A DNA stretch of 52,163 bases from Saccostrea cucullata (taxonomy: Eukaryota). The stretch spans positions 1 to 52,163 of the forward strand of contig NW_026932781.1 in assembly GCF_032062105.1 (NCBI RefSeq), given 5' to 3'. The notes under the pieces were generated by a model, which worked only from the letters and a program-made list of their open reading frames with translations, had not been told where the DNA came from and searched no databases. The translations under genes and the position numbers were made by a program. The stretch's first letter is position 1. The number at the start of each line of letters is the position of its first letter. Below, piece by piece: positions 1-39,360 of this stretch.

Positions 1-970
1 CATATCTGGTGTTCATATTCGGGTTGTAAGCTAATGAAGTGATGGTTGATCGATTGACCCCTCAACCCTTCCCGAACCCGGAAGTTAAAGGGTCAACCCT
101 GAGTTAACCCTGATTTTTAGGGTCCATTCAGGGTTATCCCTTTAAACTTCATATCTGGTGTTCATATTTGGGTTGTGAGCTAAGTTGTCGATGTTCAATC
201 CAAAAAACCCTCAACCCTTCCCGAACCCGGAAGTTAAAGGGTCAACCCTGAGTTAACCCTGATTTTCAGGGTTTATGCAGGGTTATCCCTTTAAACTTTA
301 TAGTTAGTGTTCATATTCGGGTTGTAACTTAAGGAGATGATGTTCAATTGAATGAACCCTCAACCCTGGCCCAACCCGGAAGTTAAAGGGTTTACCCTGA
401 GTTAACTCTGATTTTCAGGGTTTATTTAGGGTTATCCCTTCAAACTTCATATCTGGCGTTTATATTCGGGTTGTGAGTTAAGATGATGATGTTCAATCGA
501 ATGAACCCTCAACCCTACCCCAACCCGGAAGTTAAAGGGTTAACCCTGAGTTAACCCTGATTTTCAGGGTTGAACCAGGGTTATCCTTTTAAAGTTCATA
601 TCTGGTGTTCATATTAGGGTTGTAAGTTAAGGAGATGATGATTAATGGATTGAACCCTCAACCCTTCCCAAAACCGGAAGTTAAGGGGACAACCCTGAGT
701 TAACCCTGATTTTCAGGGTTGAACCAGGGTTATCCCTCTAAACTTCATATCTGATGTTCATCTACGGGTTGTAAGTTAAGGAGAAGTTAAAGGGTCAACC
801 CTGAGTTTACCCTGATTTTTAGGGTCCTTCGACGGTTATTCCTTTAAACTTCATATCTGGTGTTTATATTTGGGTTGTTATATAAGTAGATATAAGTAGA
901 TGATGTTTAATAGAATGAACCTCAAGCCTTCCCGAACCCAGAATTTAAATGGATGAGTCCGAGTTTACCC
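1..970. repeat. 149-bp telomere-like satellite array, copy 1
   Basis: The motif aacccgg ends at 81, 230 and 379 (period 149). The monomer is rich in aaccct/agggtt, and the last monomers are degenerate. Confidence 0.95.
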
Positions 971-1894
971 TTTCTTGAAGTCTTCGTCCAGTTTTATCTC
1001 CTTAAACCTCATATGTCTTGTTCTGATTGGGGTTGAATGATAGTTATACCAAGTCCATTTGCATGAGTTTTTAAATCTATCCAAATGCGGAAGTGTAAGG
1101 AATAACCTTGATGTAGCCCTTTTTTCAGTCTTCGTTTTCTTGTTAATATTTTGTTCATCATTCTTAACTTCATATGTATCGTTAATATTCTAAAGTCATA
1201 ATAATAGATAATGTTCAATTAATTGAGCCCTAAGAAATGTTAAATCCTTATGTTTTCAGATGTCTTATGTCTTGATATCTGCTTATTGTAATTGATTTTT
1301 AATATAATTAATTATCATACCAATTCTGCCCAGAGGCATGAAGTTCAAATTGTCATACAGAGTAAACCCTTATTGTAGAATTTATTCAGGTAATTTACTA
1401 TCACATAATATCTGGAAAAAGAATTTTTTGACCCAATTTAACAGAAAAGTCAATGCAACCTAAAAAATCAGAATTAAATTGTAATCCGAATATTTAATTC
1501 ATGCACCTTTGCATTTTTGGGGGGTTAAAAATAAACAACTGTTTCATATAAAAATCATTTATTTATTTATTTTTCAATCTGTGCTATGATCATTTTTTTA
1601 ATATTCCTTATTAAAAAGTACACAGCAAAACATGCAATTCAGTGATTATCTTACAAACTTGCTGTCAAATGACAGAATGATCTGACAAAATACGAGAAAA
1701 ATATCAATTAAGTCCATAATACAAGAATTGAAACGATTCACATTTATTTATATCAATTTAAGCCATTAATTTTTAACCTTGTCATTAAACAACCCATCAT
1801 GAATTACAGACTTTCACATATAATTGTGAAATAATAATAATGAAAACTTAGAAGAATTCTTTTCACAATTAACGCTTCTCAATTTTGCCAATGT

Positions 1895-2693
1895 TCATTT
1901 TAGACTATCTCCCACCAGCTCTTCAAGTTCCTTCTGGAGTCTTGCTTTCTCTCTTTGCGCTCTTTTCTTCTTCACGATATTTTTCACCTTCTCTTGTAAA
2001 TAGAGTGCAAAATCGCCCTTAATGTCCGGCTTCCACTCTGGGGCCCAAATTCTATCCCGCACTCCCTCCTCGATCAGTTTTTGGATATCCACCAATTTTG
2101 CTATTTAACACGAAATAACAGTTAACTTTTTCAAAATACTTTATAACAAGGGAATTATTCAAAAACGTCAGCCAACACAATCATTTTTATTCTCATTAAT
2201 TAATATCCTTTCCCGTTAATCTACAGAGAATATGTTATACTTACTTGGTGTATTTGTCTCCTGCACCCCTACCCAATAATGGATATATGCAAGCTGAAGT
2301 TGGCTGACTTTCTCTTTCTCTGGACGGTAGGTGATGCCCTCTAATACTTCCTCGACTTTCTCTCGCATGTCTTCTTTCAAATCATCCACCGACAAGGCAA
2401 CTTCTTCTTCTTCCTCCTCCTCCTCACTCTCCTCTTCTATTAACTTTCTTTTAACTCCCTTTCCGGACTCAACTTCACTTTCTAGGGTCTCCACCCTGAC
2501 TTTAACTTCTTTCAATTCATTACTAAACTTTACCATAGTCTCCATAACGAATTCTCGCAAACCTTCATACTTTGCGTCGTTTTCATCTATCAAAATGAAA
2601 ATGGTATGTGAAGTTAAAATATGCTTGCTATAGAAAATATCTTTCCAGAAACATGTAAACTACAATACCTTCTGATAGATTTCCTTTCTCCAT
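1895..2693 (-). CDS. Spliced ~190-aa acidic/coiled-coil protein, copy 1 (exons 2693-2669, 2586-2245, 2100-1895)
   Basis: ATG at 2693. GT-AG introns 2668-2587 and 2244-2101 (donor GTAAGT) are both phase 1 and join in frame: MEKGNLSE-D-ENDAKYEGLREF...ETNTP-T-KLVDIQKL...DSLK*. Exons total 25+342+206 = 573 nt. Confidence 0.75.
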
Positions 2694-3952
2694 ACTTCTT
2701 TTACAAGACGAATGACAAATCTGTAATACAAGTGAACATCGCAAAATAATTGGAAAAACAAATTTGTGGGAAGATATTATAATTTCATAAAACCAAAACA
2801 TACTAATCTTATGTATAATAGGAGTTTTATTGTCTTATCTTTGAAGGTCTATACATACTCAATAATTACACCTTCATTCACAAATAACTATTTATTTGAA
2901 GCTGCTCAGAGAGAACCAAATACTAAATTTTGCAGCCCATAAAAATTAATTCTTACCTCTAAGAATTGCTTTCAATTTAAAGGATCCTAATTCTTGTACG
3001 GAAATAGCCGTCCACACTATAGGAGTGACAAGGTACAAATGACTGCAGCTAGCTGTGTCAACGTTAGCGCGCGCTCTGAGTGATGGGAAAGCGCACTTCA
3101 CACCCCTTTGTGTATTGTGAATTCACAAGCTCAGCGTTCTTAGGTAAGTGTTTGCAGCTGTCAAATTCTAGAGTCCAGTCTTGTCCTGTAATGCATTTAG
3201 AGTTAGGGAAAACATATTATGGTGAACGTTCTAAAATATAAAACAATTTTTGTAAAACGAACAACACTTTTGACATAGGTTTTTTTGTGTGTTATTTATT
3301 TATGCTTTATTCGCAGACAAAGACTTATTCCTGCGAATTTAAACCTTCTGATAAAATATAAAATGCGTTCAACAATTCAGCGTATTCTCTCTAGGGGAAT
3401 TTAACGGATTTTGTGATTTTGTGAAAATATGATCCCGATAAAATAATCATTCCTTGGGGTAAATGGATGTTCTTAATCACTTCCTTGGGTTACTTTACTA
3501 AAAATTGTTATTTTCTTTCTAAATAGATATTTGGAATCAGCTTCGACAGAATATATTATGTTATGCAGTTTTCAATTTTATTAATTAAGAAACATGACTT
3601 AAGTAACTTTTCGATAAATGTTTAATATGTAAATATAAGTCAAAAGGTTCTGAATCGGATTTAACGCAAAATTATGTAATCTGATACGAAATAAATTGGA
3701 AAAACTCTCATGACCTTTATTAATTTCATATGTAGACATTGCAAATATTCATAACATCAGACATTTCATCAGTAATAAATTATTATAGGTCAACAACTGT
3801 TAAATGTTAAAAAAAACAATTCATAAATGTTTTTTTTTTGTATCATCTCCAATTATCTCTCTAACTCCTACATTTCCGTCCAAAACTGTTATATCTTCTG
3901 ACTTGAGAAAGTTTATAAAAGCGTCAAAACATTTCGGTGTGTTTAAATGTGC

Positions 3953-6726
3953 TTATTTATTTGAAACTCTCTTCAGTTTTGTTTCGAAAGCCCTGAACGT
4001 ACGGAAAGGAATATTTGATTTTAAACACTGTAATTTAAAGTGTTCGTATTTTTGGTGAACGCTTATCTTCTCCAAGCTTTGAGCATGCAGGAATTCCAGC
4101 TCTTGTGCCGACCAGGGAGCTTTATAAGATGTGGAAATCGGGTAGCAGGAGGAAGTTCTCCGAAGTCCTATGTTTTTATCAAAAAGAATGGGGTCATCAT
4201 CGCGATCACCATATTCATCAGTGACATTTCCAGGTAGTTCTGCGACTTCCTGTTCTGTTTCCTTTCTCTCGTCCTTTTTGTTAGTTTTCTGTTCTTCTCC
4301 TGTCAATATTTCCAGTTTATGTGGGATTGTAAAGTGCAAGCGATTCAACTGCAAATTGCGGAATCTAAAATTGGCCAATTGTAACTTGGACAAAATCTCT
4401 AATGCAATCAACTTGTTCTTGTGTAAGGGTAGATCAGTCATAAGAACCACTAGCCTGTCATATTCAACGAAATGGCCCTGCATCAAAAGAGCAATACAGC
4501 TTATGAACGTCATTGTTATCACTGTTTGATCTCTCTTTTCAACTTTCGAAGACACATTGATACCCAGGGAAGTATCTTTGGTGTTTTCTTTATTTTGCTT
4601 GGATACACAAGGCCCCGTTTTTCGAGTTCACCTTTAACTAGATCAGATATTGTAATTAGTGTAGCTTCGGTGATATCTGTCGATTCTTTGTCATACACAA
4701 CCGCCCAAAACTTGTCCTTAAAGGACCAAGTAAGGGTCATGTTTCCATGTTTGTCGTATGTGGTCACCGCGGGAAAATGTTTAAGCTCCAGTTCCAGTAA
4801 TCCGGCCTCTATGATCTCTGCCAATGGAAGGTTACTTTTATCCAAAAGTAAGTTCAAGCTGGGAAAAACCATTTGGGCATTAGTTCTCCTGTTTGTTGTT
4901 AGCAGTTTTACTAGCGACTTGAGGGTTACAGCTCCTACTGTATTAAAAGTGGTCTTACAGGACTTCATCTGTCTTAGGAAATCTTCAAACAGAACATAAC
5001 TAGCCATCTTGCCAGTTTCGTGCAAGTCATGTAGTAAGGCAACGACCAGATGTCTACCAATAACTCCGTAGCTGCCATCCAAGTGATCGTGTAATCCCAC
5101 TGATCGTGTTATCATCTTACTTATAGCCTCAGATGTTGTCCATATTTCTGGTGGTGGAATACTATATTCGTTTTGCATACAGGTTGAGTACACTTCTAAA
5201 GATAGGAATCCAAAGTGGTCACTCACACTCCGACTGGGTCCAAGAGCGCCGGGTCCCAGATTTATTGAGTATGTTGTGCTCCTTCCACAAAGTGGTTTTC
5301 CCCACAACATTTTTTCTGAGGCTAGTTCTAACTGGTAGGATTGCCAGGTAGCAAGCACATTTCCTGTTTTCTGATACTCGTTCAAAAGTTCCTGAAGTTC
5401 CTTGCAAATCCATAAGCCCAAATGTCTAATGCATGTGAGAATTTGACTGGGAAAAGGCACCAACATAGGACAACTTTCTAACAGAAATTCAAGATTTGTT
5501 ATATCAATAAAATCCAAGGCATGCAAATGGTCTGCAACAGAATCCTGTGAGACGACAAATTCTATCCTACATGCACTTTTCCTCAGCAATGTCCAGTTAC
5601 TTTGTAATGTTGATATATAATGCTCTGCGTCACGTAGAAATGCTTCCGCTGTCGATCGTGGGAAACACATACCCCCAACAATGCAGCCAGACACTGGATG
5701 ATATCGTCCATTTGGTTGCCGGTGTGGAATGTCAGCATAAAGCTGTACAAATTGAACATCTTGTGGAAAACGACAAATCTTCATCAAACAATCTTTAACA
5801 TCCATTGCTCTGCCATCTAAATTGCTCTGATAATTACCGCAGTCTGTGAACGATAAGCAGCTACTTAGTGTTCCTCTGTGGCCAATAACTTGTTCCAAAC
5901 CTACTGTGGACCAAAGCAGATCAACGTCTTCACTGTCTGACAAAATGTTTCCGGCAACATGAATAGTTGTACGCAGTATTAATTCAGTAAAGAAATCTGA
6001 CAAGGATAGCCCACATGTCATTTTTTCACCAAATCTGAAGCAAAATATGATTGGTCTTAAAAATCCACTTTGAGGCAGTTCGTCTAAAGATGTTTGCAAT
6101 GCTTCGAGTATGGGACAACAGTCATCAGGTAAAATGAACATTTTTCGAGCGTCATTAATGTCATTCTTTTGCAGAGTTCTCGTTGCCTCCCCCCTCAAGG
6201 CAAGTGTCATTAGTGAAGTTTTAAAACTTTCCCTCAGCTGGAAAAAGGTGGCTAAGGTTTGTTGTCTTACTTGCTGCTTTGATAACGCAACTGAATGGAT
6301 TTGGTGCACAGGAATTAATCCTATCCAACATTCCCATCCCCTCTCATAGAATAATTGAAAGCCTAGGCTGTTTGAAAATGTCATGAGTTCGCTTTTACTA
6401 TACTGTGGTAATTTTATATGCTTTTTCAAAACGCTTCTAACATTCCGTAAACTGGCATGATCGTGGGGAAACAGAGTAATATGTCTCACTGGCATTCTAA
6501 TTGCTGTCAAAGATTTTAATTCCAAAACGCATCCATCAATATCGAATGAATATCTCAACCATACTTCTCTGTCTACTTCATCGACTGTCAAACATCTTCC
6601 ATAAATTCGTTCATCCCTTCTTAAAAAGAGTTGAGGTGTTTCAGATAAAGAATTGTATAGCTTTGCTAAATTAAAGTTCTCTTGCACGGTTTCAGAAAAA
6701 GTTTGTACACTTTCATCAACGTCCAT
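3953..6726 (-). pseudogene. 928-aa unknown protein, copy 1, frameshifted
   Basis: A 13-bp deletion (ccatgtccatttt) near 4530 relative to copies 2 and 3 splits the ORF into 735-aa and 200-aa pieces. It could be an assembly error. Confidence 0.8.
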
Positions 6727-7625
6727 CTGAAATTAGAAAAACATTGTTTTTAGAATGGTACTCTTTGCAAAAGATGTAAAATCCAGAAAAAATTCATGTG
6801 CTGAAAATTATACTAACAATATCAAAAAATCCTGCATAAAAATAACCCTGGGTTAAACCCGTGTATATTCTGGGTTAGACTTGGGTTTATCCTGGGTTAA
6901 ACCCGGGTATATCCTGGATTATACCTGGGTTATACCCAGGTATATCCTGGGTTATACCTGGGTATATCTCGGGTTATACCCGGGTTAATCCTGGGTTATA
7001 CCCGGGTTTATCCTGGGTTATACCCGAGTATATCTTGGGTTATATCTTGGGTTATACCCGGGTTTATCCAGGGTTAAACCCAGGTATATCTCGGGTTATA
7101 CCCGGGTTAATCCTGGGTTATACCCGGGTTATACCCGGGTTTATCCTGGGTTATACCCGGGTATATCTTGGGTTATACCCGGGTTTATCCTGGGTTAAAC
7201 CCAGGTATATCTTGGGTTAAACCCGGGTATACCTGGGGTTAAACCCGGGTATACCTAGGGTATACCCGGGTTCAACCCGGGTATACCAAGGGTATACCTG
7301 GGTATACCACTGGTGTTCATACCCAGCATGATTTTAATTTTAATCAATGACCTTAATTTCAATCAATATGCTCTTATTGTATAATTAAAAGGAATATATC
7401 ATAATTACTTATTGAAAATACACTTTTATTTACCAGGTATAACTGAAAAATACAAAAAATATACATAAACTTTGTCCTTTTAAACACAAATAATTCAATA
7501 TACTTTCGTAAATTTTGAATGCTAAAATAAGGCAAAGTTATGCATAACTTCTAAAAAAAGATGTCGTTGTTTTCTCAAAAAACACATAATAATTAGCAAT
7601 TAAAAAAAATCAATTGAAATATTAC
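6727..7625 (-). other. Predicted 5'-UTR intron of the large ORF
   Basis: Minus-strand acceptor tttttctaatttcAG sits directly before the ATG (6726), and donor AAG|GTAAT is at 7625. Both are conserved in all four copies. Confidence 0.6.
6844..7308. repeat. 11/22-bp palindromic minisatellite (tacccgggtttatcctgggtta)n, copy 1
   Basis: Alternating cccggg/cctggg cores spaced 11 bp apart, with GGGTTA motifs. Confidence 0.95.
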
Positions 7626-7721
7626 CTTAGATTAAGAAAATCACCCATTAAATACACCACAGTATATAAGCGTCTGAATCGAAAGAAATCCAGCAACAAA
7701 ATACCTACTTTCACAATAAAA

Positions 7722-7777
7722 TGATTGACAATCACGTGATAAAATAGGCGGAGTTCCGCATTCCCGCACCCGCATCA
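7722..7777 (-). promoter_or_regulatory. Conserved element terminus / putative promoter
   Basis: Palindromes tgattg-a-caatca and atcacgtgat (E-box), hairpin gcgga-gt-tccgc, and three tgcgg repeats on the minus strand. The end point is identical in all four copies. Confidence 0.5.
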
Positions 7778-8037: not shown

Positions 8038-11000
8038 TTTCAGGGTTTATGCAGGGTTATCCCTTTAAACTTCATATCTGGTGTTCATATTCGGGTTGTA
8101 AGCTAAGTAGGAACCCTAACCCTAACCCTAACCCTAACCCTAACCCTAACCCTAACTCTAACCCTAACCCTTATTTTCATGGTTTCTGCAGGGTTATCAC
8201 TTTAAACTTCATATCTGGTGTTCATATTCGGGTTGTAAGCTAACGAGTGATGTTCAATCGAATGAACCCTCAACCCTGCCCGAACCCGGAAGTTAAAGAG
8301 TCAACCCTGAGTTAACCCTGATTTTCAGGGTTGTTGCAGGGTTATCCCTTTAAACTTCATATCTGGTGTTCATATTCGGGTTATAAGCTAAGGAGGTGAT
8401 GTTCAATCCAGAAACCCCTCAACCCTGCCCGAACCCGGAAGTTAAAGGGTCAACCCTGAGTTAACCCTCATTTTCAGGGTTTATGCAGGGTTATCCCTTT
8501 AAACTTCATATCTGGTGTTCATATTCGGGTTGTAAGCTAAGTAGGTAATGTTCAATCCAAAAAACCCTCAACCCTTCCCGAACCCGGAAGTTAAAGGGTC
8601 AACCCTGAGTTAACCCTGATTTTCAGGGGTTATGCAGGGTTATCCCTTTAAACTTTAAACCCTGATTTTTAGGGTTTATTCAGGGTTATCCCTTTAAACT
8701 TCATATGGTTCAATCCAAACAACCCTCAACCCTTCCCGAACCCGGAAGTTAAAGGGTCAAACCTGAGTTAACCCTGATTTTCAGGGTTTATGCAGGGTTA
8801 TCCCTTTAAACTTCATATCTGGTGTTCATATTTGGGTTGTAAGCTAAGTAGGTGATGGTTGATCGATTGACCCCTCAACCCTTCCCGAACCCGGAAGTTA
8901 AAGGGTCAACCCTGAGTTAACCCTGATTTTCAGGGTTTCTGCAGGGTTATCCCTTTAAACTTCATATCTGGTGTTCATATTCGGGTTGTAAGCTTAGTAC
9001 GTGATTGTTGATAGATTGACCCCTCAACCCTTCCCGAACCCGGAAGTTAAAGGGTCAACCCTGAGTTAACCCTGATTTTCAGGGTTTATGCAGGGTTATC
9101 CCTTTAAACTTCATATCTGGTGTTCATATTCGGGTTGTAAGCTAAGTAGGTGATGGGTTGTCAAGAACCCGGAAGTTAAAGGGTCAACCCTGAGTTAACC
9201 CTGATTTTCAGGGTTCAGGGTTATCCCTTTAAACTTCAATCTGGTGTTCATACGGGTTGTAAGCCTCAACCCTTCCCGAACCCGGAAGTTAAAGGGTCAA
9301 CCCTGAGTTAACCCTGATTTTCAGGGTTTATGCAGGGTTATCCCTTTAAACTTCATATCTGGTGTTCATATTCGGGTTGTAAGCTAAGTAGGTGATGTTG
9401 ATCAAAAAACCCTCAACCCTTCCCGAACCCGGAAGTTAAAGGCTCAACCCTGAGTTAACCCTGATTTTTAAGGTCCATTCAGGGTTATCCCTTTAAACTT
9501 CATATCTGGTGTTCATATTTGGGTTGTAAGCTAAGTAGGTGATGGTTGGTCGATTGACCTCTCAACCCTGCCCGAACCCGGAAGTTAAAGGGTCAACCCT
9601 GAGTTAACCCTGATTTTCAGGGTTTATGCAGGGTTATCCCTTTAAACTTCATATCTGGGTTATCCCTTTAAACTTCATATCAATGGTGTTCATATTCGGG
9701 TTGTAAGCTAAGTAGGTAAGTATCCCTTTAAACTTCATATCTGGTGTTCATATTCGGGTTGTAAGTTAAGTAGAGGATGCTTAATTGATTGACCCCTCAA
9801 CCCTTGCCGAACCCGGAAGTTAAAGGGTCAACCCTGAGTTAACCCTGATTTTCAGGGTTTATGCAGGGTTATCCCTTTAAACTTCATATCTGGTGTTCAT
9901 ATTCGGGTTGTAAGTTAAGTAGGTGATGGTTGTGACCCTCAACCCTGCCCGAACCCGGAAGTTAAAGGGTCAACCCTGAGTTAACCCTGATTTTCAGGGT
10001 TTATGCAGGGTTATCCCTTTAAACTTCATATCTGGTGTTCATATTCGGGTTGTAAGCTAAGTAGGTGATGGTTGATCGATTGACCCCTCAACCCTTCCCG
10101 AACCCGGAAGTTAAAGGGTCAACCCTGAGTTAACCCTGATTTTTAGGGTCCATTCAGGGTTATCCCTTTAAACTTCATATCTGGTGTTCATATTCGGGTT
10201 GTAAGCTAAGTAGGGGATGGTTGATCGATTGATTCCTCAACCCTTCCCGAACCCGGAAGTTAAAGGGTCAACCCTGAGTTAACCCTGATTGTCAGGGTTT
10301 ATGCTGGGTTATCCCTTTAAACTTCATAGCTAGTGTTCATATTCGGGTTGTAACTTAAGGAGATGATGTTCAATCGAATGAACCCTCAACCCTGCCCGAA
10401 CCCGGAAGTTAAAGGGTCAACCCTGAGTTAACCCTGATTTTCAGGGTTTATGCAGGGTTATCCCTTTAAACTTCATATCTGGTGTTCATATTCGGGTTGT
10501 AAGCTAAGGAGGTGATGGTTGATCGATTGACCCCTCAACCCTTCCCGAACCCGGAAGTTAAAGGGTCAACCCTGAGTTAACCCTGATTTTTAGGGTCCAT
10601 TCAGGGTTATCCCTTTAAACTTCATATCTGGTGTTCATATTTGGGTTGTAAGCTAAGTAGGTGATGGTTGATCGTTTGACCCCTCAACCCTGCCCGAACC
10701 CGGAAGTTAAAGGGTCAACCCTGAGTTAACCCTGATTTTTTCAGGGTTTATGCAGGGTTATCCCTTTAAACTTCATAGCTGGTGTTCATATTCGGGTTGT
10801 AACTTAAGGAGATGATGTTCAATCGAATGAACCCTCAACCCTGGCCTAACCCGGAAGTTAAAGGGTCAACCTTGAGTTAACCCTGATTTTCAGGATTTAT
10901 GCAGGGTTATCCCTGTAAACTTCATATCTGGTGTTCATATTCGGGTTGTAAGCTAATGAAGTGATGGTTGATCGATTGACCCCTCAACCCTTCCCGAACC

Positions 11001-17693: not shown

Positions 17694-17810
17694 CTGAAAT
17701 TAGAAAAACATTGTTTTTAGAATGGTACTCTTTGCAAAAGATGTAAAATCCAGAAAAAATTCATGTGCTGAAAATTATACTAACAATATCAAAAAATCCT
17801 GCATAAAAAT

Positions 17811-28536: not shown

Positions 28537-28653
28537 CTGAAATTAGAAAAACATTGTTTTTAGAATGGTACTCTTTGCAAAAGATGTAAAATCCAGAAAA
28601 AATTCATGTGCTGAAAATTATACTAACAATATCAAAAAATCCTGCATAAAAAT

Positions 28654-29761: not shown

Positions 29762-32637
29762 CTAACCCTGGTGTTCATATTCGGGTTGTAAGCCGATTAA
29801 CCCTAACCCTAACCCGGAAGTTAACCCTAACCCTGAGTTAACCCTGATTTTCAGGGTTTATGCAGGGTTATCCCTTTAAACTTCATATCTGGTGTTCATA
29901 TTCGGGTTGTGAGTTAAGGAGATGATGTTCAATCCAAAAAACCCTCAACCCTGCCCGAACCCGGAAGTTAAAGGGTCAACCCTGAGTTAACCCTGATTTT
30001 CAGGGTTTATGCAGGGTTATCCCTTTAAACTTCATATCTGGTGTTCATATTCGGGTTGTAAGCTAAGTAGGTGATGGTTGATCGATTGACCCCCTAACCC
30101 TTCCCGAACCCGGAAGTTAAAGGGTCAACCCTGAGTTAACCCTCATTTTCAGGGTTTATGCAGGGTTATCCCTTTAAACTTCATATCTGGTGTTCATATT
30201 TGGGTTATAAGCTAAGTTGGTGATGTTCAATCCAAAAAACCCTCAACCCTTCCCGAACCCGGAAGTTAAAGGGTCAACCCTGAGTTAACCCTGATTTTCA
30301 GGGTTTATGCAGGGTTATCCCTTTAAACTTCATAGCTGGTGTTCATATTCGGGTTGTAAGCTTAGTACGTGATTGTTGATAGATTGACCCCTCAACCCTT
30401 CCCGAACCCGGAAGTTAAAGGGTCAACCCTGAGTTAACCCTGATTTTCAGGGTTTATGCAGGGTTATCCCTTTAAACTTCATATCTGGTGTTCATATTCG
30501 GGTTGTAAGCTAAGTAGGTGATGGTTGATCGATTGACCCCTCAACCCTGCCCGAACCCGGAAGTTAAAGGGTCAACCCTGAGTTAACCCTGATTTTCAGG
30601 GTTTATGCAGGGTTATCCCTTTAAACTTCATATCTGGTGTTCATATTCGGGTTGTAAGCTTAGTACGTGATTGTTGATAGATTGACCCCTCAACCCTTCC
30701 CGAACCCGGAAGTTAAAGGGTCAACCCTGAGTTAACCCTGATTTTCAGGGTTTATGCAGGGTTATCCCTTTAAACTTCATATCTGGTGTTCATATTCGGG
30801 TTGTAAGCTAAGTAGGGGATGGTTGATCGATTGATTCCTCAACCCTTCCCGAACCCGGAAGTTAAAGGGTCAACCCTGAGTTAACCCTGATTTTTAGGGT
30901 CCATTCAGGGTTATCCCTTTAAACTTCATATCTGGTGTTCATATTTGGGTTGTAAGCTAAGTAGGTGGTGTTCAATCCAAAAAACCCTCAACCCTTCCCG
31001 AACCCGGAAGTTAAAGGCTCAACCCTGAGTTAACCCTGATTTTTAAGGTCCATTCAGGGTTATCCCTTTAAACTTCATATCTGGTGTTAAGCTAAGTAGG
31101 TGATGGTTCAATCGATTGAACCCTCAACCCTTCCCGAACCCGGAAGTTAAAGGGTCAACCCTGAGTTAACCCTGATTTTCAGGGTTTATGCAGGGTTATC
31201 CCTTTAAACTTCATATCTGGTGTTCATATTCGGGTTGTAAGCTAAGTAGGTGATGGTTGATCGATTGACCCCTCAACCCTTCCCGAACCCGGAAGTTAAA
31301 GGGTCAACCCTGAGTTAACCCTGATTTTCAGGGTTTATGCAGGGTTATCCCTTTAAACTTCATATCTGGTGTTCATATTCGGGTTGTAAGCTAAGTAAGT
31401 AGGTGAGGTGATGTTCAATCCAAAAAACCCTCAACCCTTCCCGAACCCGGAAGTTAAAGGGTCAACCCTGAGTTAACCCTGATTTTCAGGGTTTATGCAG
31501 GGTTATCCCTTTAAACTTCATATCTGGTGTTCATATTCGGGTTGTAAGCTAAGTAGGTGATGTTCAATCCAAAAAACCCTCAACCCTTCCCGAACCCGGA
31601 AGTTAAAGGGTCAACCCTGAGTTAACCCTGATTTTCAGGGTTTATGCAGGGTTATCCCTTTAAACTTCATATCTGGTGTTCATATTCGGGTTGTAAGCTA
31701 AGTAGGTGATGGTTGATCGATTGACCCCTCAACCCTTCCCGAACCCGGAAGTTAAAGGGTCAACCCTGAGTTAACCCTGATTTTTAGGGTCCATTCAGGG
31801 TTATCCCTTTAAACTTCATCTCTGGTGTTCATATTCGGGTTGTAAGCTAAGTAGGTGATGTTCAATCCAAAAAACCCTCAACCCTTCCCGAACCCGGAAG
31901 TTAAAGGGTCAACCCTGAGTTAACCCTGATTTTCAGGGTTTATGCAGGGTTATCCCTTTAAACTTCATATCTGGTGTTCATATTCGGGTTGTAAGTTAAG
32001 GAGATGATGTTCAATCGAATGAACCCTCAACCCTGCCCGAACCCGGAAGTTAAAGGGTCAACCCTGAGTTAACCCTGATTTTCAGGGTTTATGCAGGGTT
32101 ATCCCTTTAAACTTCATATCTGGTATTCACATTCGGGTTGTGAGCTAAGTAGGTGATGTTCAATCGAATGAACCCTCAACCCTGGCCCAACCCGGAAGTT
32201 AAAGGGTTAACCCTGAGTTAACCCTGATTTTCAGGGTTGAACCAGGGTTATCCTTTTAAAGTTCATATCTGGTGTTCATATTAGGGTTGTAAGTTAAGGA
32301 GATGATGATTAATGGATTGAACCCTCAACCCTTCCCAAAACCGGAAGTTAAAGGGACAACCCTGAGTTAACCCTGATTTTTAGGGTTGAACCAGGGTTAT
32401 CCCTTTAAACTTCATATCTGATGTTCATCTACGGGTTGTAAGTTAAGGAAAAGTTAAAGGGTCAACCCTGAGTTTACCCTGATTTTTAGGGTCCTTCGAC
32501 GGTTATTCCTTTAAACTTCATATCTGGTGTTTATATTTGGGTTGTTATATAAGTAGATATAAGTAGATGATGTTTAATAGAATGAACCTCAAGCCTTCCC
32601 GAACCCAGAATTTAAATGGATGAGTCCGAGTTTACCC
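29762..32637. repeat. 149-bp satellite array, copy 4
   Basis: Same monomer and the same degenerate right end as the other arrays. Confidence 0.95.
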
Positions 32638-33524
32638 TTTCTTGAAGTCTTCGTCCAGTTTTATCTCCTTAAACCTCATATGTCTTGTTCTGATTGGGGT
32701 TGAATGATAGTTATACCAAGTCCATTTGCATGAGTTTTTAAATCTATCCAAATGCGGAAGTGTAAAGAATAACCTTGATGTAGCCCTTTTTTCAGTCTTC
32801 GTTTTCTTGTTAATATTTTGTTCATCATTCTTAACTTCATATGTATCGTTAATATTCTAAAGTCATAATAATAAATAATGTTCAATTAATTGAGCCCTAA
32901 GAAATGTTAAATCCTTATGTTTTCAGATGTCTTATGTCTTGATATCTGCTTATTGTAATTGATTTTTAATATAATTAATTATCATACCAATTCTGCCCAG
33001 AGGCATGAAGTTCAAATTGTCATACAGAGTAAACCCTTATTGTAGAATTTATTCAGGTAATTTACTATCACATAATATCTGGAAAAAGAATTTTTTGACC
33101 CAATTTAACAGAAAAGTCAATGCAACCTAAAAAATCAGAATTAAATTGTAATCCGAATATTTAATTCATGCACCTTTGCATTTTTGGGGGGTTAAAAATA
33201 AACAACTGTTTCATATAAAAATCATTTATTTATTTATTCTTCAATCTGTGCTATGATCATTTTTTAATATTCCTTATTAAAAAGTACACAGCAAAATATG
33301 CAATTCAGTGATTATCTTACAAACTTGCTGTCAAATGACAGAATGATCTGACAAGAATTGAAACAATTCACATTTATTTATATCAATTTAAGCCATTAAT
33401 TTTTAACCTTGTCATTAAACAACCCATCATGAATTACAGACTTTCACATATAATTGTGAAATAATAATAATGAAAACTTAGAAGAATTCTTTTCACAATT
33501 AACGCTTCTCAATTTTGCCAATGT

Positions 33525-34320
33525 TCATTTTAGACTATCTCCCACCAGCTCTTCAAGTTCCTTCTGGAGTCTTGCTTTCTCTCTTTGCGCTCTTTTCTTC
33601 TTCACGATATTTTTCACCTTCTCTTGTAAATAGAGTGCAAAATCGCCCTTAATGTCCGGCTTCCACTCTGGGGCCCAAATTCTATCCCGCACTCCCTCCT
33701 CGATCAGTTTTTGGATATCCACCAATTTTGCTATTTAACACGAAATAACAGTTAACTTTTTCAAAATACTTTATAACAAGGGAATTATTCAAAAACGTCA
33801 GCCAACACAATCATTTTTATTCTCATTAATTAATATCCTTTCCCGTTAATCTACAGAGAATATGTTATACTTACTTGGTGTATTTGTCTCCTGCACCCCT
33901 ACCCAATAATGGATATATGCAAGCTGAAGTTGGCTGACTTTCTCTTTCTCTGGACGGTAGGTGATGCCCTCTAATACTTCCTCGACTTTCTCTCGCATGT
34001 CTTCTTTCAAATCATCCACCGACAAGGCAACTTCTTCTTCCTCCTCCTCCTCACTCTCCTCTTCTATTAACTTTCTTTTAACTCCCTTTCCGGACTCAAC
34101 TTCACTTTCTAGGGTCTCCACCCTGACTTTAACTTCTTTCAATTCATTACTAAACTTTACCATAGTCTCCATAACGAATTCTCGCAAACCTTCATACTTT
34201 GCGTCGTTTTCATCTATCAAAATGAAAATGGTATGTGAAGTTAAAATATGCTTGCTATAGAAAATATCTTTCCAGAAACATGTAAACTACAATACCTTCT
34301 GATAGATTTCCTTTCTCCAT
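33525..34320 (-). CDS. Small spliced gene, copy 4 (in frame, one Glu shorter)
   Basis: A 3-bp deletion in the poly-Glu run preserves the frame; splice sites are conserved. Confidence 0.75.
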
Positions 34321-35579
34321 ACTTCTTTTACAAGACGAATGACAAATCTGTAATACAAGTGAACATCGCAAAATAATTGGAAAAACAAATTTGTGGGAAG
34401 ATATTATAATTTCATAAAACCAAAACATACTAATCTTATGTATAATAGGAGTTTTATTGTCTTATCTTTGAAGGTCTATACATAACCAATAATTACACCT
34501 TCATTCACAAATAACTATTTATTTGAAGCTGCTCAGAGAGAACCAAATACTAAATTTTGCAGCCCATAAAAATTAATTCTTACCTCTAAGAATTGCTTTC
34601 AATTTAAAGGATCCTAATTCTTATACGGAAATAGCCGTCCACACTATAGGAGTGACAAGGTACAAATGACTGCAGCTAGCTGTGTCAACGTTAGCGCGCG
34701 CTCTGAGTGATGGGAAAGCGCACTTCACACCCCTTTGTGTATTGTGAATTCACAAGCTCAGCGTTCTTAGGTAAGTGTTTGCAGCTGTCAAATTCTAGAG
34801 TCCAGTCTTGTCCTGTAATGCATTTAGAGTTAGGGAAAACATATTATGGTGAACGTTCTAAAATATAAAACAATTTTTGTAAAACGAACAACACTTTTGA
34901 CATAGGTTTTTTTGTGTGTTATTTATTTATGCTTTATTCGCAGACAAAGACTTATTCCTGCGAATTTAAACCTTCTGATAAAATATAAAATGCGTTCAAC
35001 AATTCAGCGTATTCTCTCTAGGGGAATTTAACGGATTTTGTGATTTTGTGAAAATATGATCCCGATAAAATAATCATTCCTTGGGGTAAATGGATGTTCT
35101 TAATCACTTCCTTGGGTTACTTTACTAAAAATTGTTATTTTCTTTCTAAATAGATATTTGGAATCAGCTTCGACAGAATATATTATGTTATGCAGTTTTC
35201 AATTTTATTAATTAAGAAACATGACTTAAGTAACTTTTCGATAAATGTTTAATATGTAAATATAAGTCAAAAGGTTCTGAATCGGATTTAACGCAAAATT
35301 ATGTAATCTGATACGAAATAAATTGGAAAAACTCTCATGACCTTTATTAATTTCATATGTAGACATTGCAAATATTCATAACATCAGACATTTCATCAGT
35401 AATAAATTATTATAGGTCAACAACTGTTAAATGTTAAAAAAAACAATTCATAAATGTTTTTTTTTTGTATCATCTCGAATTATCTCTCTAACTCCTACAT
35501 TTCCGTCCAAAACTGTTATATCTTCTGACTTGAGAAAGTTTATAAAAGCGTCAAAACATTTAGGTGTGTTTAAATGTGC

Positions 35580-38367
35580 TTATTTATTTGAAACTCTCTT
35601 CAGTTTTGTTTCGAAAGCCCTGAACGTACGGAAAGGAATATTTGATTTTAAACACTGTAATTTAAAGTGTTCGTATTTTTGGTGAACGCTTTTCTTCTCC
35701 AAGCTTTGAGCATGCAGGAATTCCAGCTCTTGTGCCGACCAGGGAGCTTTATAAGATGTGGAAATCGGGTAGCAGGAGGAAGTTCTCCGAAGTCCTATGT
35801 TTTTATCAAAAAGAATGGGGTCATCATCGCGATCACCATATTCATCAGTGACATTTCCAGGTAGTTCTGCGACTTCCTGTTCTGTTTCCTTTCTCTCGTC
35901 CTTTTTGTTAGTTTTCTGTTCTTCTCCTGTCAATATTTCCAGTTTATGTGGGATATGTAAAGTGCAAGCGATTCAACTGCAAATTGCGGAATCTAAAATT
36001 GGCTAATTGTAACTTGGACAAAATCTCTAATGCAATCAACTTGTTCTTGTGTAAGGGTAGATCAGTCATAAGAACCACTAGCCTGTCATAATCAACGAAA
36101 TGGCCCTGCATCAAAAGAGCAATACAGCTTATGAACGTCATTGTTATCACTCTTTGATCCATGTCCATTTTCTCTCTTTTCAACTTTCGAAGACACATTG
36201 ATACCCAGGGAAGTATCTTTGGTGTTTTCTTTATTTTGCTTGGATACACAAGGCCCCGTTTTTCGAGTTCACCTTTAACTAGATCAGATATTGTTATTAG
36301 TGTAGCTTCGGTGATATCTGTCGATTCTTTGTCATACACAACCGCCCAAAACTTGTCCTTAAAGGACCAAGTAAGGGTCATGTTTCCATGTTTGTCGTAT
36401 GTGGTCACCGCGGGAAAATGTTTAAGCTCCAGTTCCAGTAATCCGGCCTCTATGATCTCTGCCAATGGAAGGTTACTTTTATCCAAAAGTAAGTTCAAGC
36501 TGGGAAAAACCATTTGGGCATTAGTTCTCCTGTTTGTTGTTAGCAGTTTTACTAGCGACTTGAGGGTTACAGCTCCTACTGTATTAAAAGTGGTCTTACA
36601 GGACTTCATCTGTCTTAGGAAATCTTCAAACAGAACATAACTAGCCATCTTGCCAGTTTCGTGCAAGTCATGTAGTAAGGCAACGACCAGATGTCTACCA
36701 ATAACTCCGTAGCTGCCATCCAAGTGATCGTGTAATCCCACTGATCGTGTTATCATCTTACTTATAGCCTCAGATGTTGTCCATATTTCTGGTGGTGGAA
36801 TACTATATTCGTTTTGCATACAGGTTGAGTACACTTCTAAAGATAGGAATCCAAAGTGGTCACTCACACTCCGACTGGGTCCAAGAGCGCCGGGTCCCAG
36901 ATTTATTGAGTATGTTGTGCTCCTTCCACAAAGTGGTTTTCCCCACAACATTTTTTCTGAGGCTAGTTCTAACTGGTAGGATTGCCAGGTAGCACACACA
37001 TTTCCTGTTTTCTGATACTCGTTCAAAAGTTCCTGAAGTTCCTTGCAAATCCATAAGCCCAAATGTCGAATGCATGTGAGAATTTGACTGGGAAAAGGCA
37101 CCAACATAGGACAACTTTCTAACAGAAATTCAAGATTTGTTATATCAATAAAATCCAAGGCATGCAAATGGTCTGCAACAGAATCCTGTGAGACGACAAA
37201 TTCTATCCTACATGCACTTTTCCTCAGCAATGTCCAGTTACTTTGTAATGTTGATATATAATGCTCTGCGTCACGTAGAAATGCTTCCGCTGTCGATCGT
37301 GGGAAACACATACCCCCAACAATGCAGCCAGACACTGGATGATATCGTCCATTTGGTTGCCGGTGTGGAATGTCAGCATAAAGCTGTACAAATTGCACAT
37401 CCTGTGGAAAACGACAAATCTTCATCAAACAATCTTTAACATCCATTGCTCTGCCATCTAAATTGCTCTGATAATTACCGCAGTCTGTGAACGATAAGCA
37501 GCTACTTAGTGTTCCTCTGTGGCCAATAACTTGTTCCAAACCTGCTGTGGACCAAAGCAGATCAACGTCTTCACTGTCTGACAAAATGTTTCCGGCAACA
37601 TGAATAGTTGTACGCAGTATTAATTCGGTATAGAAATCTGACAAGGATAGCCCACATGTCATTTTTTCACCAAATCTGAAGCAAAATATGATTGGTCTTA
37701 AAAATCCACTTTGAGGCAGTTCGTCTAAAGATGTTTGCAATGCTTCGAGTATGGGACAACAGTCATCAGGTAAAATGAACATTTTTCGAGCGTCATTAAT
37801 GTCATTCTTTTGCAGAGTTCTCGTAGCCTCCCCCCTCAAGGCAAGCGTCATTAGTGAAGTTTTAAAACTCTCCCTCAGTTGGAAAAAGGTGGCTAAGGTT
37901 TGTTGTCTTACTTGCTGCTTTGATAACGCAACTGAATGCATTTGGTGCACAGGAATTAATCCTATCCAACATTCCCATCCCCTCTCATAGAATAATTGAA
38001 AGCCTAGGCTGTTTGAAAATGTCATGAGCTCGCTTTTACTATACTGTGGTAATTTTATATGTTTTTTCAAAACGCTTCTAACATTCCGTAAACTGGCATG
38101 ATCGTGGGGAAACAGAGTAATATGTCTCACTGGCATTCTAATTGCTGTCAAAGATTTTAATTCCAAAACGCATCCATCAATATCGAATGAATATCTCAAC
38201 CATACTTCTCTGTCTACTTCATCGACTGTCAAACATCTTCCATAAATTCGTTCATCCCTTCTTAAAAAGAGTTGAGGTGTTTCAGATACAGAATTGTATA
38301 GCTTTGCTAAATTAAAGTTCTCTAGCACGGTTTCAGAAAAAGTTTGTACACTTTCTTCAACGTCCAT
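35580..38367 (-). pseudogene. 928-aa unknown protein, copy 4, frameshifted
   Basis: A 1-bp insertion near 35955 (gggatatgtaaa versus gggattgtaaa) gives an 807-aa product that lacks the Myb-like tail. Confidence 0.8.
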
Positions 38368-38494
38368 CTGAAATTAGAAAAACATTGTTTTTAGAATGGT
38401 ACTTTTTGCAGAAGATGTAAAATCCAGAAAAAAAAATCATGTTCGAATAACCGGGTTTTACAAAAGGATTGACCCTGTAGCATGACCAAGTTTT

Positions 38495-38889
38495 CCCTGG
38501 GTTATACCCGGGTTTAACCTGGGTTAAACCCGGGATTACCTTGGGTTAAACCCGTGTATATTCTGGGTCAGACTTGGGTTTATCCTGGGTTAAACCCGGG
38601 TATATCCTGTATTATACCTGGGTTATACCCAGGTATATTCTGGGTTATACCCGGGTATATCCTGGGTTATACCCGGGTATATCTCGGGTTATACCCGGGT
38701 TTATCCTGGGTTATACCCGGGTATATCTTGGGTTATACCCGGGTTTATCCTGGGTTAAACCCAGGTATATCTTGGGTTAAACCCGGGTATACCCGGGGTT
38801 AAACCCGGGTATACCTGGGGTATACCCGGGTTAAACCCGGGTATACCCGGGTTAAACCCGGGTATACCAAGGGTATACCTGGGCATACC
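38495..38889. repeat. 11/22-bp palindromic minisatellite, copy 4
   Basis: Same unit as copy 1. Confidence 0.95.
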
Positions 38890-39360
38890 AATGGTGTTCA
38901 TACCCAGCAAGATTTTAATTTTATTCAATGACCTTCATTTCATTCAATATGTTCTAATTGTATAATTAAAAGGAATATATCATAATTACTTATTGAAAAT
39001 ACACTTTTATTTACCAGGTATTATTGAAAAACACAAAAAATATACATAAACTTTGTCCTTTTAAACACAAATAATTCAATATACTTTCGTAAATTTTGAA
39101 TGCTAAAATAAGGCAAGGTTATGCATAACTTCTATAAAAAAAGATGTCGCTGTTTTCTCAAACAACACATAATAATTAGCAATTAAAAAAAATCAAATGA
39201 AATATTACCTTAGATTAAGAAAATCACCCATTAAAAACACAACAGTATATAAGCGTCTAAATCGAAAGAAATCCAGCAACAAAATACCTACTTTCACAAT
39301 CAAATGATTGACAATCACGTGATAAAATAGGCGGAGTCCCGCATTCCCGCACCCGCATCA

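What the first reader, a model, noticed from the sequence alone, without database searches (positions are those of the whole stretch)
1..39360. Undescribed two-gene element stacked head-to-tail between telomeric tracts
Seen: four ~10-kb units share one base-precise end (...cccgcatca) and one ragged end where the 149-bp satellite merges into ccctaa. Both genes are on the G-rich strand, pointing toward the inferred tip. There is no RT, poly(A), LTR, TIR, HUH-helicase or DDE motif. Known: RT-based telomeric elements (HeT-A/TART, Athena) attach by their 3' end and face the other way. Yeast Y' elements have this orientation and tandem layout but encode a helicase. Inference: this is a new DNA-based telomere-resident element that extends chromosome ends by adding whole units.
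Basis: partly seen in the sequence, partly recalled or inferred. Interest (0 to 1): 0.95.

Follow-up and report, generated by a model that had tools for sequence, protein, structure and literature searches.

The report
RT-less telomere-stacking element family in bivalves
This oyster chromosome end carries four stacked copies of a previously undescribed jumping element that sits only on telomere repeats, has no reverse transcriptase, and encodes an unknown enzyme-like protein, so it may be a new way of adding DNA to chromosome ends.

Summary
The repeat structure is real. Four head-to-tail units of 9.8-11 kb are 97-99.5% identical. Each holds a telomere-type tract, an element-specific 149-bp satellite, a small acidic ORF, an intronless 928-aa ORF on the G-rich strand, and 22-bp repeats.

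One correction: the "precise end ...cccgcatca" is only the edge of the N mask. In unmasked copies on other contigs the element runs 16 nt further and meets (TTAGGG)n in one fixed phase.

It is not a single-locus duplication. The terminal core motif occurs 28 times on 20 contigs (control 0). At least six protein lineages (28-100% identity) coexist in this genome. In another bivalve assembly, 5 of 5 copies lie within 35 kb of the ends of Mb-scale contigs, point outward, and each sits on a telomere tract capping a different sequence. A distant copy is subtelomeric in a carp.

The protein has no Pfam or PDB sequence match. It is under purifying selection and keeps D62, D64, K102, H103, H256, Q328, Y330, R387 and E389 down to 24% identity. 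Its N-domain resembles TBP-fold Rep_trans rolling-circle nickases only weakly.

Best reading: an autonomous, probably DNA-based, telomere-end-adding element. The mechanism is inferred, not shown. I found no published description.

The parts
1..7777 (-). Unit A (distal, cut by the contig start): satellite, small ORF, frameshifted large ORF, 22-bp repeats, terminal region
   Evidence: 99.4% identical to unit C over 7790 bp. ORF pieces are 4519-6726 and 3953-4555.
8038..18771 (-). Unit B, complete between two N runs, with an intact 928-aa ORF
   Evidence: 99.5% identical to unit C.
18921..29564 (-). Unit C, complete, with an intact 928-aa ORF
29762..39360 (-). Unit D, the most proximal and most diverged unit (97.0-97.6%); ORF interrupted
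   Evidence: ORF pieces are 35944-38367 (807 aa) and 35583-35957.
14907..17693 (-). ORF1, 928 aa, intronless. N-terminal beta-rich domain (about aa 57-426) with invariant D62, D64, K102, H103, H256, Q328, Y330, R387, E389. Helical middle part, disordered linker (aa 813-854), C-terminal 3-helix HTH (aa 870-928). The second intact copy is at 25750-28536.
   Evidence: No Pfam match. AF2 model pLDDT 88 for the whole protein and 92.6 for the N-domain. Conservation. dN/dS about 0.09. Low poly(A)+ read cover.
12854..13613 (-). Small acidic, coiled-coil-like ORF2 in two open stretches (13200-13613 and 12854-13060). Specific to this lineage.
   Evidence: RNA reads over 12700-13290.
8038..11834 (.). 149-bp satellite array of unit B. 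The other arrays are at 1-878, 18921-22675 and 29762-32545. Array length and the point of transition into CCCTAA runs differ between units.
   Evidence: In the whole genome the satellite is found only on contigs that also carry the element.
17814..18318 (.). 22-bp repeat array (CCTGGGTTATACCCGGGTATAT type) between the promoter region and the ATG. Copies are also at 6847-7308, 28657-29095 and 38496-38889.
18600..18771 (-). Terminal region of unit B as visible in the window: three GCGGG-type iterons, a CACGTG palindrome, a TATATA box at 18657-18662, and a likely RNA 5' end at 18643. The 16-nt outermost part of the conserved core lies under the N run.
   Evidence: The loose end of the X6 contig maps to 18629-18643.
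18772..18920 (.). N run between units B and C. The other N runs are at 7778-8037, 29565-29761 and 39361-39600. Not filled. Inferred to cover the last 16 nt of the element plus a telomere-type tract.
   Evidence: Flanks. Equivalent unmasked junctions on other contigs.
39601..39860 (.). Degenerate CCCTAA tract passing into a 16-nt variant repeat (ACCCTAACCCCCACTA) proximal to unit D
39861..41241 (-). ORF-less 'element 2'. Its conserved end (...GCGAAGATGCCGG type, related to the core motif) abuts CCCTAA. It is followed by an 84-bp duplicate and a second truncated copy at about 41363-41845. Probably a non-autonomous relative.
   Evidence: The same end follows telomere tracts in L007, L013 and L009.

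Best explanation
This is an autonomous, telomere-resident mobile element family, so far undescribed.

Anatomy of a unit:
- It begins, on the G-rich strand, with a conserved 21-nt core (TATAGGC-nn-TTTGACG-nn-ATG). The core is joined in one fixed phase to ...TTAGGG.
- Next come lineage-specific iterons or a palindrome, then a promoter.
- It encodes one conserved intronless protein of about 930 aa.
- It ends distally in an element-specific satellite.

How the arrays arise: units are added one after another onto telomere-capped chromosome ends. The conserved end always faces the centromere. The distal end is then eroded and re-capped by telomerase, which gives the ragged ends and the telomere tracts between units.

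Proposed mechanism (inferred):
1. The protein is a site-specific tyrosine nickase with a TBP-like, Rep_trans-like catalytic domain and a C-terminal HTH.
2. It binds the iterons and nicks the G-strand at GGG|TA.
3. It stays linked to the element's 5' end.
4. It joins that end to the free 3'-OH of a telomeric G-overhang.
5. Cleavage at the next unit's core would release a unit that already ends in TTAGGG repeats.
6. Host C-strand fill-in completes the addition.

What is shown: anatomy, distribution, conservation and expression. What is inferred: catalysis, strand transfer and a DNA intermediate.
For: Structure and copy number:
- Four units at 97-99.5% identity. The most proximal unit is the most diverged.
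- ORF1 relatives form at least six lineages in this genome (100, 68, 44, 33, 30 and 28% identity). Many are intact and in tandem at about 10.8-11 kb.
- The terminal core occurs 28 times on 20 contigs, against 0 for the reversed control. Some copies are only 278-1379 bp apart, which fits heavily eroded units.
- The satellite occurs only on element-bearing contigs.

Junctions:
- The phase ...TTAGGG|TA is identical in 12 of 12 junctions on 10 contigs.
- The core is conserved between lineages whose proteins are only 32-45% identical. It is followed by GCGGG x3, by GATGAGCC x3, or by 16-22-bp palindromes.
- ORF-less elements share the same kind of end.

Other assemblies:
- L032, L033, L040 and L041 show the same layout near contig ends.
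- In ERZ25069870, 5 of 5 copies lie within 35 kb of the ends of 1.8-10.5 Mb contigs. All point outward, and each sits on a telomere tract capping a different sequence.

Protein:
- 458 clusters at 50% identity match with E<=0.001.
- dN/dS is about 0.09.
- D62, K102, H103, H256, Q328, Y330, R387 and E389 are invariant in 72 of 72 full-length members down to 24% identity; D64 is kept in 70 of 72.
- These residues lie on predicted beta-strands.
- The best fold matches of the N-domain are two Rep_trans initiators (4cij: Z 5.6, 181 residues; 4cwc: Z 4.5) and TBPs (Z 4.4-4.9).
- Rep_trans enzymes have the TBP fold and carry D, RxDxAxD, RxYxK and RxE on the sheet (PMC4797284, PMC13107129).
- The C-terminus is a 3-helix HTH.

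Transcription and orientation:
- The mRNA seems to start about 130 nt inside the unit, so the sense mRNA cannot regenerate the terminus.
- ORF orientation relative to unit polarity differs between lineages. That is neutral for a DNA route.
Against: - The fold match is weak. Z 5.6 is below the tool's own noise guide of Z 7-8 for unmatched models. Foldseek found nothing at E<=0.001 in PDB, BFVD or the Atlas.
- Profile comparison with a RepC-family alignment gave a probability of 0.2%.
- Pfam Rep_trans does not hit the genome.
- I could not superpose structures, so the equivalence of Y330 with the catalytic Tyr is untested.
- The residues flanking the Tyr (Q-x-Y-x-D) differ from R-x-Y-x-K.
- The polarity of the ends is exactly that of RT-based terminal retroelements.
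- A fixed junction phase would also be inherited under an RNA or a recombination route.
- There is no direct evidence of nicking, circles, single strands or new insertions.
- The tandem array was not checked with long reads.
Confidence: 0.42

Rival explanations
1. RNA-mediated terminal addition, like Athena/Coprina PLEs or HeT-A, with the reverse transcriptase supplied in trans.

A C-strand-sense transcript of the whole unit reads through the conserved end into the proximal telomere tract. Its 3' CCCUAA repeats pair with a G-overhang. An RT from another element, or telomerase, copies it. Incomplete copying gives the truncated distal ends. ORF1, which is antisense to this RNA in most lineages, would be an accessory or targeting protein.
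For: - The conserved end is proximal and the truncated end distal, which is the classic polarity of terminal retroelements.
- A conserved terminal tail of about 21 nt is shared with ORF-less elements, as in LINE/SINE pairs.
- RT-bearing elements are present nearby. One is a non-LTR element with APE and RT whose 5' end abuts CCCTAA at 42001.
Against: - There is no RT, poly(A) or hammerhead in any unit.
- The neighbouring LINE does not share the tail.
- The only conserved ORF would be antisense to the template in most lineages, yet it is under strong purifying selection and has an enzyme-like invariant residue set.
- No complete unit seen here, in this or another species, carries an RT.
- The strand of the RNA reads could not be determined.
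Confidence: 0.25
2. A Y'-like subtelomeric repeat.

The units spread and amplify only by telomere-telomere recombination, break-induced replication, or circles that integrate through the telomere tracts. ORF1 would be a selfish or domesticated telomere-associated DNA-binding protein (for example a capping or chromatin factor) with no role in movement.
For: - Tandem units separated by telomere tracts, with the ORF pointing to the tip, match the layout of yeast Y' arrays.
- The 5' leader is more similar between the two close subfamilies (83%) than the ORF is (about 67% nt, synonymous sites saturated). This points to recombination between lineages.
- The HTH and the TBP-like saddle could simply bind DNA.
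Against: - Many deeply diverged lineages coexist in one genome, each with intact ORFs.
- The 21-nt core is kept exactly at the junction across species, and it is shared by unrelated ORF-less elements.
- Each copy in ERZ25069870 sits on a telomere tract that caps a different proximal sequence.
- The invariant Tyr, Asp, His and Arg-x-Glu on beta-strands look catalytic rather than merely DNA-binding.
Confidence: 0.2
3. An assembly artefact, such as a collapsed or falsely duplicated repeat, or an ordinary single-locus segmental duplication of host genes.
For: - The contig is short and repeat-rich, and it contains N runs.
- The four-copy structure was not verified with raw long reads.
Against: - The units differ from each other by 0.5-3%, by satellite length, by distinct distal junctions and by different ORF lesions.
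- The same layout is present on about 20 other contigs of this genome and in at least five other assemblies.
Confidence: 0.02

Closest known systems
Yeast Y' subtelomeric elements
   Same: - Tandem head-to-tail units of several kb are separated by short telomere tracts.
- There is a large ORF on the strand running towards the tip.
- Copy number varies between chromosome ends.
   Different: - Y' encodes a helicase; here there is no helicase.
- Y' has no conserved terminal core plus iterons at a fixed junction phase.
- Y' has no ORF-less relatives sharing the end.
- Y' does not form many deeply diverged lineages across phyla.
RT-based telomeric elements (HeT-A/TART/TAHRE, TRAS/SART, Athena/Coprina PLEs, Terminons, MoTeR)
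   Same: - They live only at or in telomere repeats.
- They stack head-to-tail with the precise end proximal and the truncated end distal.
- Telomere repeats lie between units.
   Different: - No RT, no oligo(A) and no hammerhead.
- In most lineages the conserved ORF lies on the opposite strand to that expected for the RNA template.
Rep_trans (PF02486) and Rep-Arvir rolling-circle initiators / MOBT relaxases
   Same: - The architecture is an N-terminal beta-saddle domain followed by an HTH DNA-binding part.
- An invariant Tyr, acidic residues and an R-x-E are on beta-strands, in the same order along the chain (D...Y...RxE).
- The cis site combines a conserved core with adjacent iterons or a hairpin.
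- These enzymes are the best, though weak, fold matches (PMC4797284, PMC13107129).
   Different: - There is no sequence or profile similarity.
- The protein is three times larger, with a long helical middle part.
- The Tyr context is QxYxD, not RxYxK.
- Those families are known only from bacteria and archaea, on circular replicons.
Helitrons / IS91-type rolling-circle transposons
   Same: One precisely defined end, a poorly defined other end, and no TIRs or target duplications.
   Different: No HUH Rep or Pif1 helicase. The target is the telomere repeat or chromosome end rather than AT dinucleotides.

Membership tests
Rep_trans rolling-circle initiators (PF02486) | Match to the family profile | tested here: not met
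   - No Pfam hit in 37 members at E<=1.
- PF02486 has no match in the genome at E<=1.
- hhalign against a RepC-family alignment gave probability 0.2%.
Rep_trans rolling-circle initiators (PF02486) | TBP-like catalytic fold | tested here: inconclusive
   VIA-align: 4cij Z 5.6 (181 aligned, rmsd 5.0), 4cwc Z 4.5, TBPs Z 4.4-4.9. These are the top-ranked matches but lie below the tool's noise guide. Foldseek was negative.
Rep_trans rolling-circle initiators (PF02486) | [quoted passage not shown] | tested here: inconclusive
   Y330, D62, R387 and E389 are invariant in 72 of 72 members, and D64 in 70 of 72. All lie on predicted strands. Spatial equivalence could not be tested.
Rep_trans rolling-circle initiators (PF02486) | Site-specific nicking with a covalent 5'-phosphotyrosine link | not testable with these tools
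   Needs biochemistry.
Telomeric non-LTR retrotransposons (HeT-A/TART, TRAS/SART) | RT (and Gag/EN) ORFs inside the element | tested here: not met
   The unit's ORFs have no RVT or endonuclease domain. The RT in the window belongs to a separate element at 42-47 kb.
Telomeric non-LTR retrotransposons (HeT-A/TART, TRAS/SART) | Oligo(A) at the proximal junction | tested here: not met
   Junctions read ...TTAGGG|TATAGGC on the G-strand, with no A/T run.
EN(-) Penelope-like elements / Terminons | PLE-type RT and hammerhead ribozyme motifs | tested here: not met
   No RT. No Rfam family at gathering score anywhere in the window.
Yeast Y'-type subtelomeric repeats | Tandem units separated by telomere tracts at chromosome ends | tested here: met
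Yeast Y'-type subtelomeric repeats | Helicase ORF; spread by recombination only | tested here: not met
   No helicase domain. The recombination-only part cannot be tested here.
Helitron / HUH rolling-circle transposons | HUH Rep fused to a Pif1-like helicase | tested here: not met
DDE cut-and-paste transposons | DDE transposase, terminal inverted repeats, target-site duplication | tested here: not met
   No DDE or rve domain in the unit. One end is ragged and differs between copies, so there is no TIR pair.

The most novel reading that the evidence does not exclude
This is the first DNA-based, RT-less telomere-targeting transposon class in animals.

Its enzyme would be the first eukaryotic relative of the TBP-fold (Rep_trans / Rep-Arvir) tyrosine nickases. 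It would use the natural 3' overhang of a chromosome end as the acceptor for a relaxase-like strand transfer. Each transferred unit would bring its own TTAGGG tail. The family could then serve as a telomerase-independent way of lengthening or healing chromosome ends in bivalves and some fishes.
Probability: 0.3. Interest if true: 0.95.

Novelty: categorically new. Interest (0 to 1): 0.85.

Why it matters
All telomere-specific mobile elements known so far are retroelements, and the only comparable RT-less repeat (yeast Y') encodes a helicase and is thought to move by recombination.

This family differs in four ways:
- it is large (458 clusters at 50% identity);
- its single conserved protein has no known relative but looks like an enzyme;
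- it has a conserved terminal core with origin-like iterons;
- it has a strict association with chromosome ends in several species.

That would add a new class of eukaryotic mobile DNA. It would also give a testable new route for adding DNA to chromosome ends. If the fold lead holds, TBP-fold rolling-circle nickases would extend from bacteria and archaea into animals.

There is a practical side as well. These arrays explain interstitial telomere tracts and broken contigs at bivalve chromosome ends.

Tried and rejected
Searches that gave nothing useful:
- Pfam on all unit ORFs and on 37 family members: nothing.
- PHROGs on eight N-domains: nothing meaningful.
- PDB sequence profile search at E<=10: 0 hits.
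- Foldseek against PDB (full protein and N-domain), BFVD and the ESM Atlas: no match at E<=0.001, TM 0.1-0.3.
- Protein-atlas feature search: no usable hit.
- PF02486 in the genome: none.
- hhalign of the family N-domain against a RepC-family alignment: probability 0.2%. That alignment is shallow (>=86% identity), so the test has little power.
- Rfam on the whole window: no family, so no hammerhead.
- A search for the element's tail in the neighbouring LINE: none.
- Literature searches for a described telomeric RT-less element in molluscs, or a eukaryotic Rep_trans: none found.

Leads that did not hold:
- ORF2 as a conserved second gene. It has no relative outside the subfamily.
- The 1554-aa ORF beside the fish homologue. 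It has no Pfam hit and a low atlas recognition score, so it may not be a real gene.
- The 366-aa ORF in L035. It is repetitive and not informative.

Unresolved:
- The apparent joint 18629->17702 in one RNA-type contig has no canonical splice sites. It may be an intron, a deleted copy or a library artefact.


Full report
**Handling of the N runs**

The window has four N runs: 7778-8037, 18772-18920, 29565-29761 and 39361-39600. Each starts right after the same nine bases of the unit. I did not fill them or fetch their letters.

Three tool outputs reached into those coordinates without my intending it:
- A regex scan over all fetched loci included loci that the genome search had cut from the window's own contig. 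It printed coordinates of repeat runs there.
- A genome-wide motif search listed hits at those places.
- One row did the same.

I noted this and did not read those loci again. Everything I say about the junction rests on other contigs and other assemblies. From those, the N runs are most simply a mask over telomere-type repeats plus the last 16 nt of the element, not true gaps. The letters on either side are therefore not adjacent in the genome. No reading frame crosses an N run.

**Observation**

Four head-to-tail units are 97.0-99.5% identical. End-to-end periods are 10,994, 10,793 and 9,796 bp.

Read on the + strand, each unit contains, in order:
- short CCCTAA runs mixed with satellite fragments, at a different point in each unit;
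- a 149-bp satellite array of 2.7-3.8 kb;
- about 3 kb holding a small acidic ORF on the - strand;
- a 928-aa intronless ORF on the - strand;
- a 22-bp repeat array;
- about 450 bp ending in ...CCCGCATCA.

The ORF is intact in units B and C and broken in A and D. Unit D, nearest the centromere side, is the most diverged. This fits stepwise addition from the tip, but it is not proof.

Proximal to the array lie:
- a degenerate telomere tract;
- ORF-less elements with a related end;
- a non-LTR retrotransposon (NADAR-domain ORF, APE, RT) whose 5' end abuts CCCTAA at 42001;
- LTR-retrotransposon remains.

**It is a family, and it lives on telomere repeats**

Named relatives from Mya arenaria and a lucinid-associated MAG fit a bivalve.

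Within this genome:
- ORF1 has 55 six-frame matches, falling into lineages of about 100, 68, 44, 33, 30 and 28% identity. Many are open over 930-944 aa, and several are in tandem at 10.7-11.2 kb.
- In every 5'-complete copy of the two closest lineages that I could read on other contigs (C5640, C3086, C19166, C1101, C21135, C18978, C1430), the sense strand reads (TTAGGG)n directly followed by the element.
- The 44% lineage (C8737) and the 30% lineage (C1828) also have a G-strand tract 1.9 kb upstream of the ATG.
- The 21-nt terminal core occurs 28 times on 20 contigs, against 0 for the reversed control. Some copies are only 278-1379 bp apart, as expected for units eroded almost to their conserved end.
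- The 149-bp satellite occurs only on contigs that carry the element.

In other assemblies:
- The same layout recurs in L032 (two units 14.8 kb apart, junction to junction), L033, L040 and L041. All lie near contig ends with the ORF pointing outward.
- In ERZ25069870, five of five copies lie within 35 kb of the ends of 1.8-10.5 Mb contigs and point outward. The sequence capped by the telomere tract just proximal to each copy is different every time. That is what insertion onto telomere-capped ends predicts. Simple copying of one ancestral junction does not predict it.
- Two copies have no telomere tract within 10 kb: Mya arenaria at 0.42 Mb (degenerate) and L035.
- A 27%-identical copy lies 19-48 kb from the start of a Cirrhinus molitorella chromosome, among CCCTAA tracts. 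There the ORF is antisense to the unit's polarity.
- The 28% oyster lineage seems to have the same reversed arrangement.

**The terminus**

All 12 junctions read in 10 contigs have the phase ...GGTTAGGG|TA. The first 21 nt (TATAGGC-nn-TTTGACG-nn-ATG) are shared by lineages whose proteins are only 32-45% identical.

What follows the core is lineage-specific but of one kind:
- three direct GCGGG-type repeats here;
- three GATGAGCC repeats in L041;
- a 16-bp perfect palindrome in L032;
- a 10+10 inverted repeat in L040;
- a 12-bp palindrome in ERZ25069870.

ORF-less elements carry variants of the same end. Examples are 'element 2' in the window, a 1.15-kb repeat in L033, and a second element in L043/L044.

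A conserved core beside lineage-specific iterons or hairpins, shared with non-autonomous relatives, is the grammar of a site recognised by an element-encoded protein. It resembles rolling-circle origins and oriT sites (general knowledge; PMC4797284 for pT181).

**The protein**

Sequence searches:
- No Pfam, PHROG or PDB sequence match.
- The family is large, with 458 clusters at 50% identity at E<=0.001. Nearly all full-length members are 900-960 aa.
- Against the 68% lineage, pN is 0.20 and pS is 0.72 (saturated). dN/dS is about 0.09, which is an upper-bound type estimate.

Structure:
- The AF2 models are confident: pLDDT 88 for the whole protein and 92.6 for aa 40-440.
- The model shows a beta-rich N-domain, a helical middle, a disordered linker and a C-terminal three-helix bundle.
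- The C-terminal bundle matches winged-helix or homeodomain folds: Z 5.3, rmsd 1.6 over 51 residues.

Conserved residues:
- In 72 full-length members down to 24% identity, D62, K102, H103, H256, Q328, Y330, R387 and E389 never vary. D64 varies twice.
- They sit on predicted strands. The i, i+2 spacing (D62/D64, Q328/Y330/D332, R387/E389) would put each set on one face of the sheet.

Fold comparison:
- Foldseek finds nothing.
- The exhaustive aligner ranks a Rep_trans initiator first (4cij: Z 5.6, 181 of 267 residues). A second Rep_trans (4cwc, Z 4.5) and several TBPs (Z 4.4-4.9, about 150 of 180 residues) come next.
- Rep_trans enzymes have the TBP fold. Their Tyr, two Asp and an R-x-E all lie on the sheet (PMC4797284). 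The archaeal Rep-Arvir family was linked to them in the same way, by structure only (PMC13107129).
- These Z values are below the tool's own noise guide, and the profile comparison is negative.
- I therefore treat 'Rep_trans-like nickase' as a lead, not as membership.

**Expression**

Oligo-dT RNA-seq reads of the same species label cover ORF1 and the region of ORF2 thinly: 54 reads in one run and 1 in another.

One 3.2-kb RNA-type contig spans the ORF with its UTRs. Its 5' letters map to 18629-18643, about 19 nt after a TATATA box. The sense mRNA thus seems to start about 130 nt inside the unit and cannot carry the terminal core. The contig skips 17703-18628 without canonical splice sites, which I cannot explain.

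**Mechanism**

Shown:
- the anatomy;
- the strict association with telomere tracts;
- the fixed junction;
- conservation of the core and of the protein;
- the different proximal flanks.

Inferred: units are added to chromosome ends by their conserved end. They are then eroded distally and healed by telomerase. The satellite, which is rich in AACCCT-like words, would act as a buffer and a seed.

My preferred route (about 0.4):
1. ORF1 binds the iterons and nicks the G-strand at GGG|TA, remaining on the 5' end.
2. It joins that end to the 3'-OH of a G-overhang, which is itself the upstream half of the nick site.
3. A second cut at the next unit's core would release a unit that already ends in TTAGGG.
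4. C-strand fill-in by the normal telomere machinery completes the addition.

Rivals:
- An RNA route with RT in trans (about 0.25). The end polarity fits it. The missing RT, the antisense conserved ORF and the enzyme-like residues fit it less well.
- Y'-like recombination only (about 0.2). This fits the array and the mosaic leader (83% identity in the leader against about 67% in the ORF). It does not fit the conserved junction grammar or the different proximal flanks.
- An assembly artefact, which is very unlikely.

**Comparison and novelty**

The layout is closest to yeast Y'. The end polarity is closest to telomeric retroelements. The protein and cis-site logic are closest to Rep_trans-type initiators and relaxases. 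The element fails a defining feature of each: helicase, RT with oligo(A) or hammerhead, and profile match. Four literature searches found no description. I cannot check Repbase. I rate it categorically new, with the mechanism open.

Noticed in passing
window 42001-47400 (+): A non-LTR retrotransposon with a NADAR-domain first ORF (42077-43597), an APE endonuclease (43560-44330) and an RT (44228-46174). Its 5' end starts directly after a CCCTAA tract (41846-42000). It may be a telomere-repeat-targeting LINE. Its 3' end is not flanked by telomere repeats in the window.
   Followed up: partly
window 47855-50762 (-): LTR-retrotransposon remains: integrase (H2C2 plus rve), a weak aspartyl protease and a SCAN-like Gag domain, in three adjoining ORFs.
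   Followed up: partly
window 39677-39857: An array of a 16-nt variant repeat (ACCCTAACCCCCACTA), that is, one telomere repeat alternating with a C-rich decamer, at the proximal edge of the array.
   Followed up: no
L005:366-1500 against L007:240-1500: The non-coding 5' leader, including the 22-bp repeats, is 83% identical between the two close subfamilies, although their ORFs have saturated synonymous sites (pS 0.72). This suggests recent exchange of the leader module between lineages, or strong constraint on it.
   Followed up: partly
window 17703-18628 (unit B leader): One RNA-type contig joins 18629 to 17702, skipping the 22-bp repeat array. There is 4-nt microhomology (TAAT) and no GT-AG, although good GT and AG sites lie 9 nt away on each side. 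It could be an intron, a deleted genomic copy or a library artefact.
   Followed up: partly
window 17814-18318 and its copies in the other units: The 22-bp leader repeats are built from inverted telomere-like half-sites (GGGTTA/TAACCC around CCCGGG). Each can form a 7-bp hairpin. They might bind telomere-repeat-binding proteins or the element's own HTH.
   Followed up: no
L034:3510-8174 (-), Cirrhinus molitorella chromosome end: A 1554-aa open frame lies divergent from the fish ORF1 homologue and is cut off by a telomere tract. It has no Pfam match. An oyster stretch (C6239:68880-73487) is 28% identical over its whole length but carries stops. Its atlas recognition score is low, so it may not be a real gene.
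   Followed up: partly
L031:3235-6032 and L031:1739-2765 (C1828, 30% lineage): This lineage carries its own satellites: a 16-bp CCCTATACCTTGTAAC repeat of 2.8 kb and TATAGGG-type repeats. It also has a 209-aa coiled-coil ORF on the strand opposite to ORF1. So each lineage has a different satellite and a different small ORF.
   Followed up: partly
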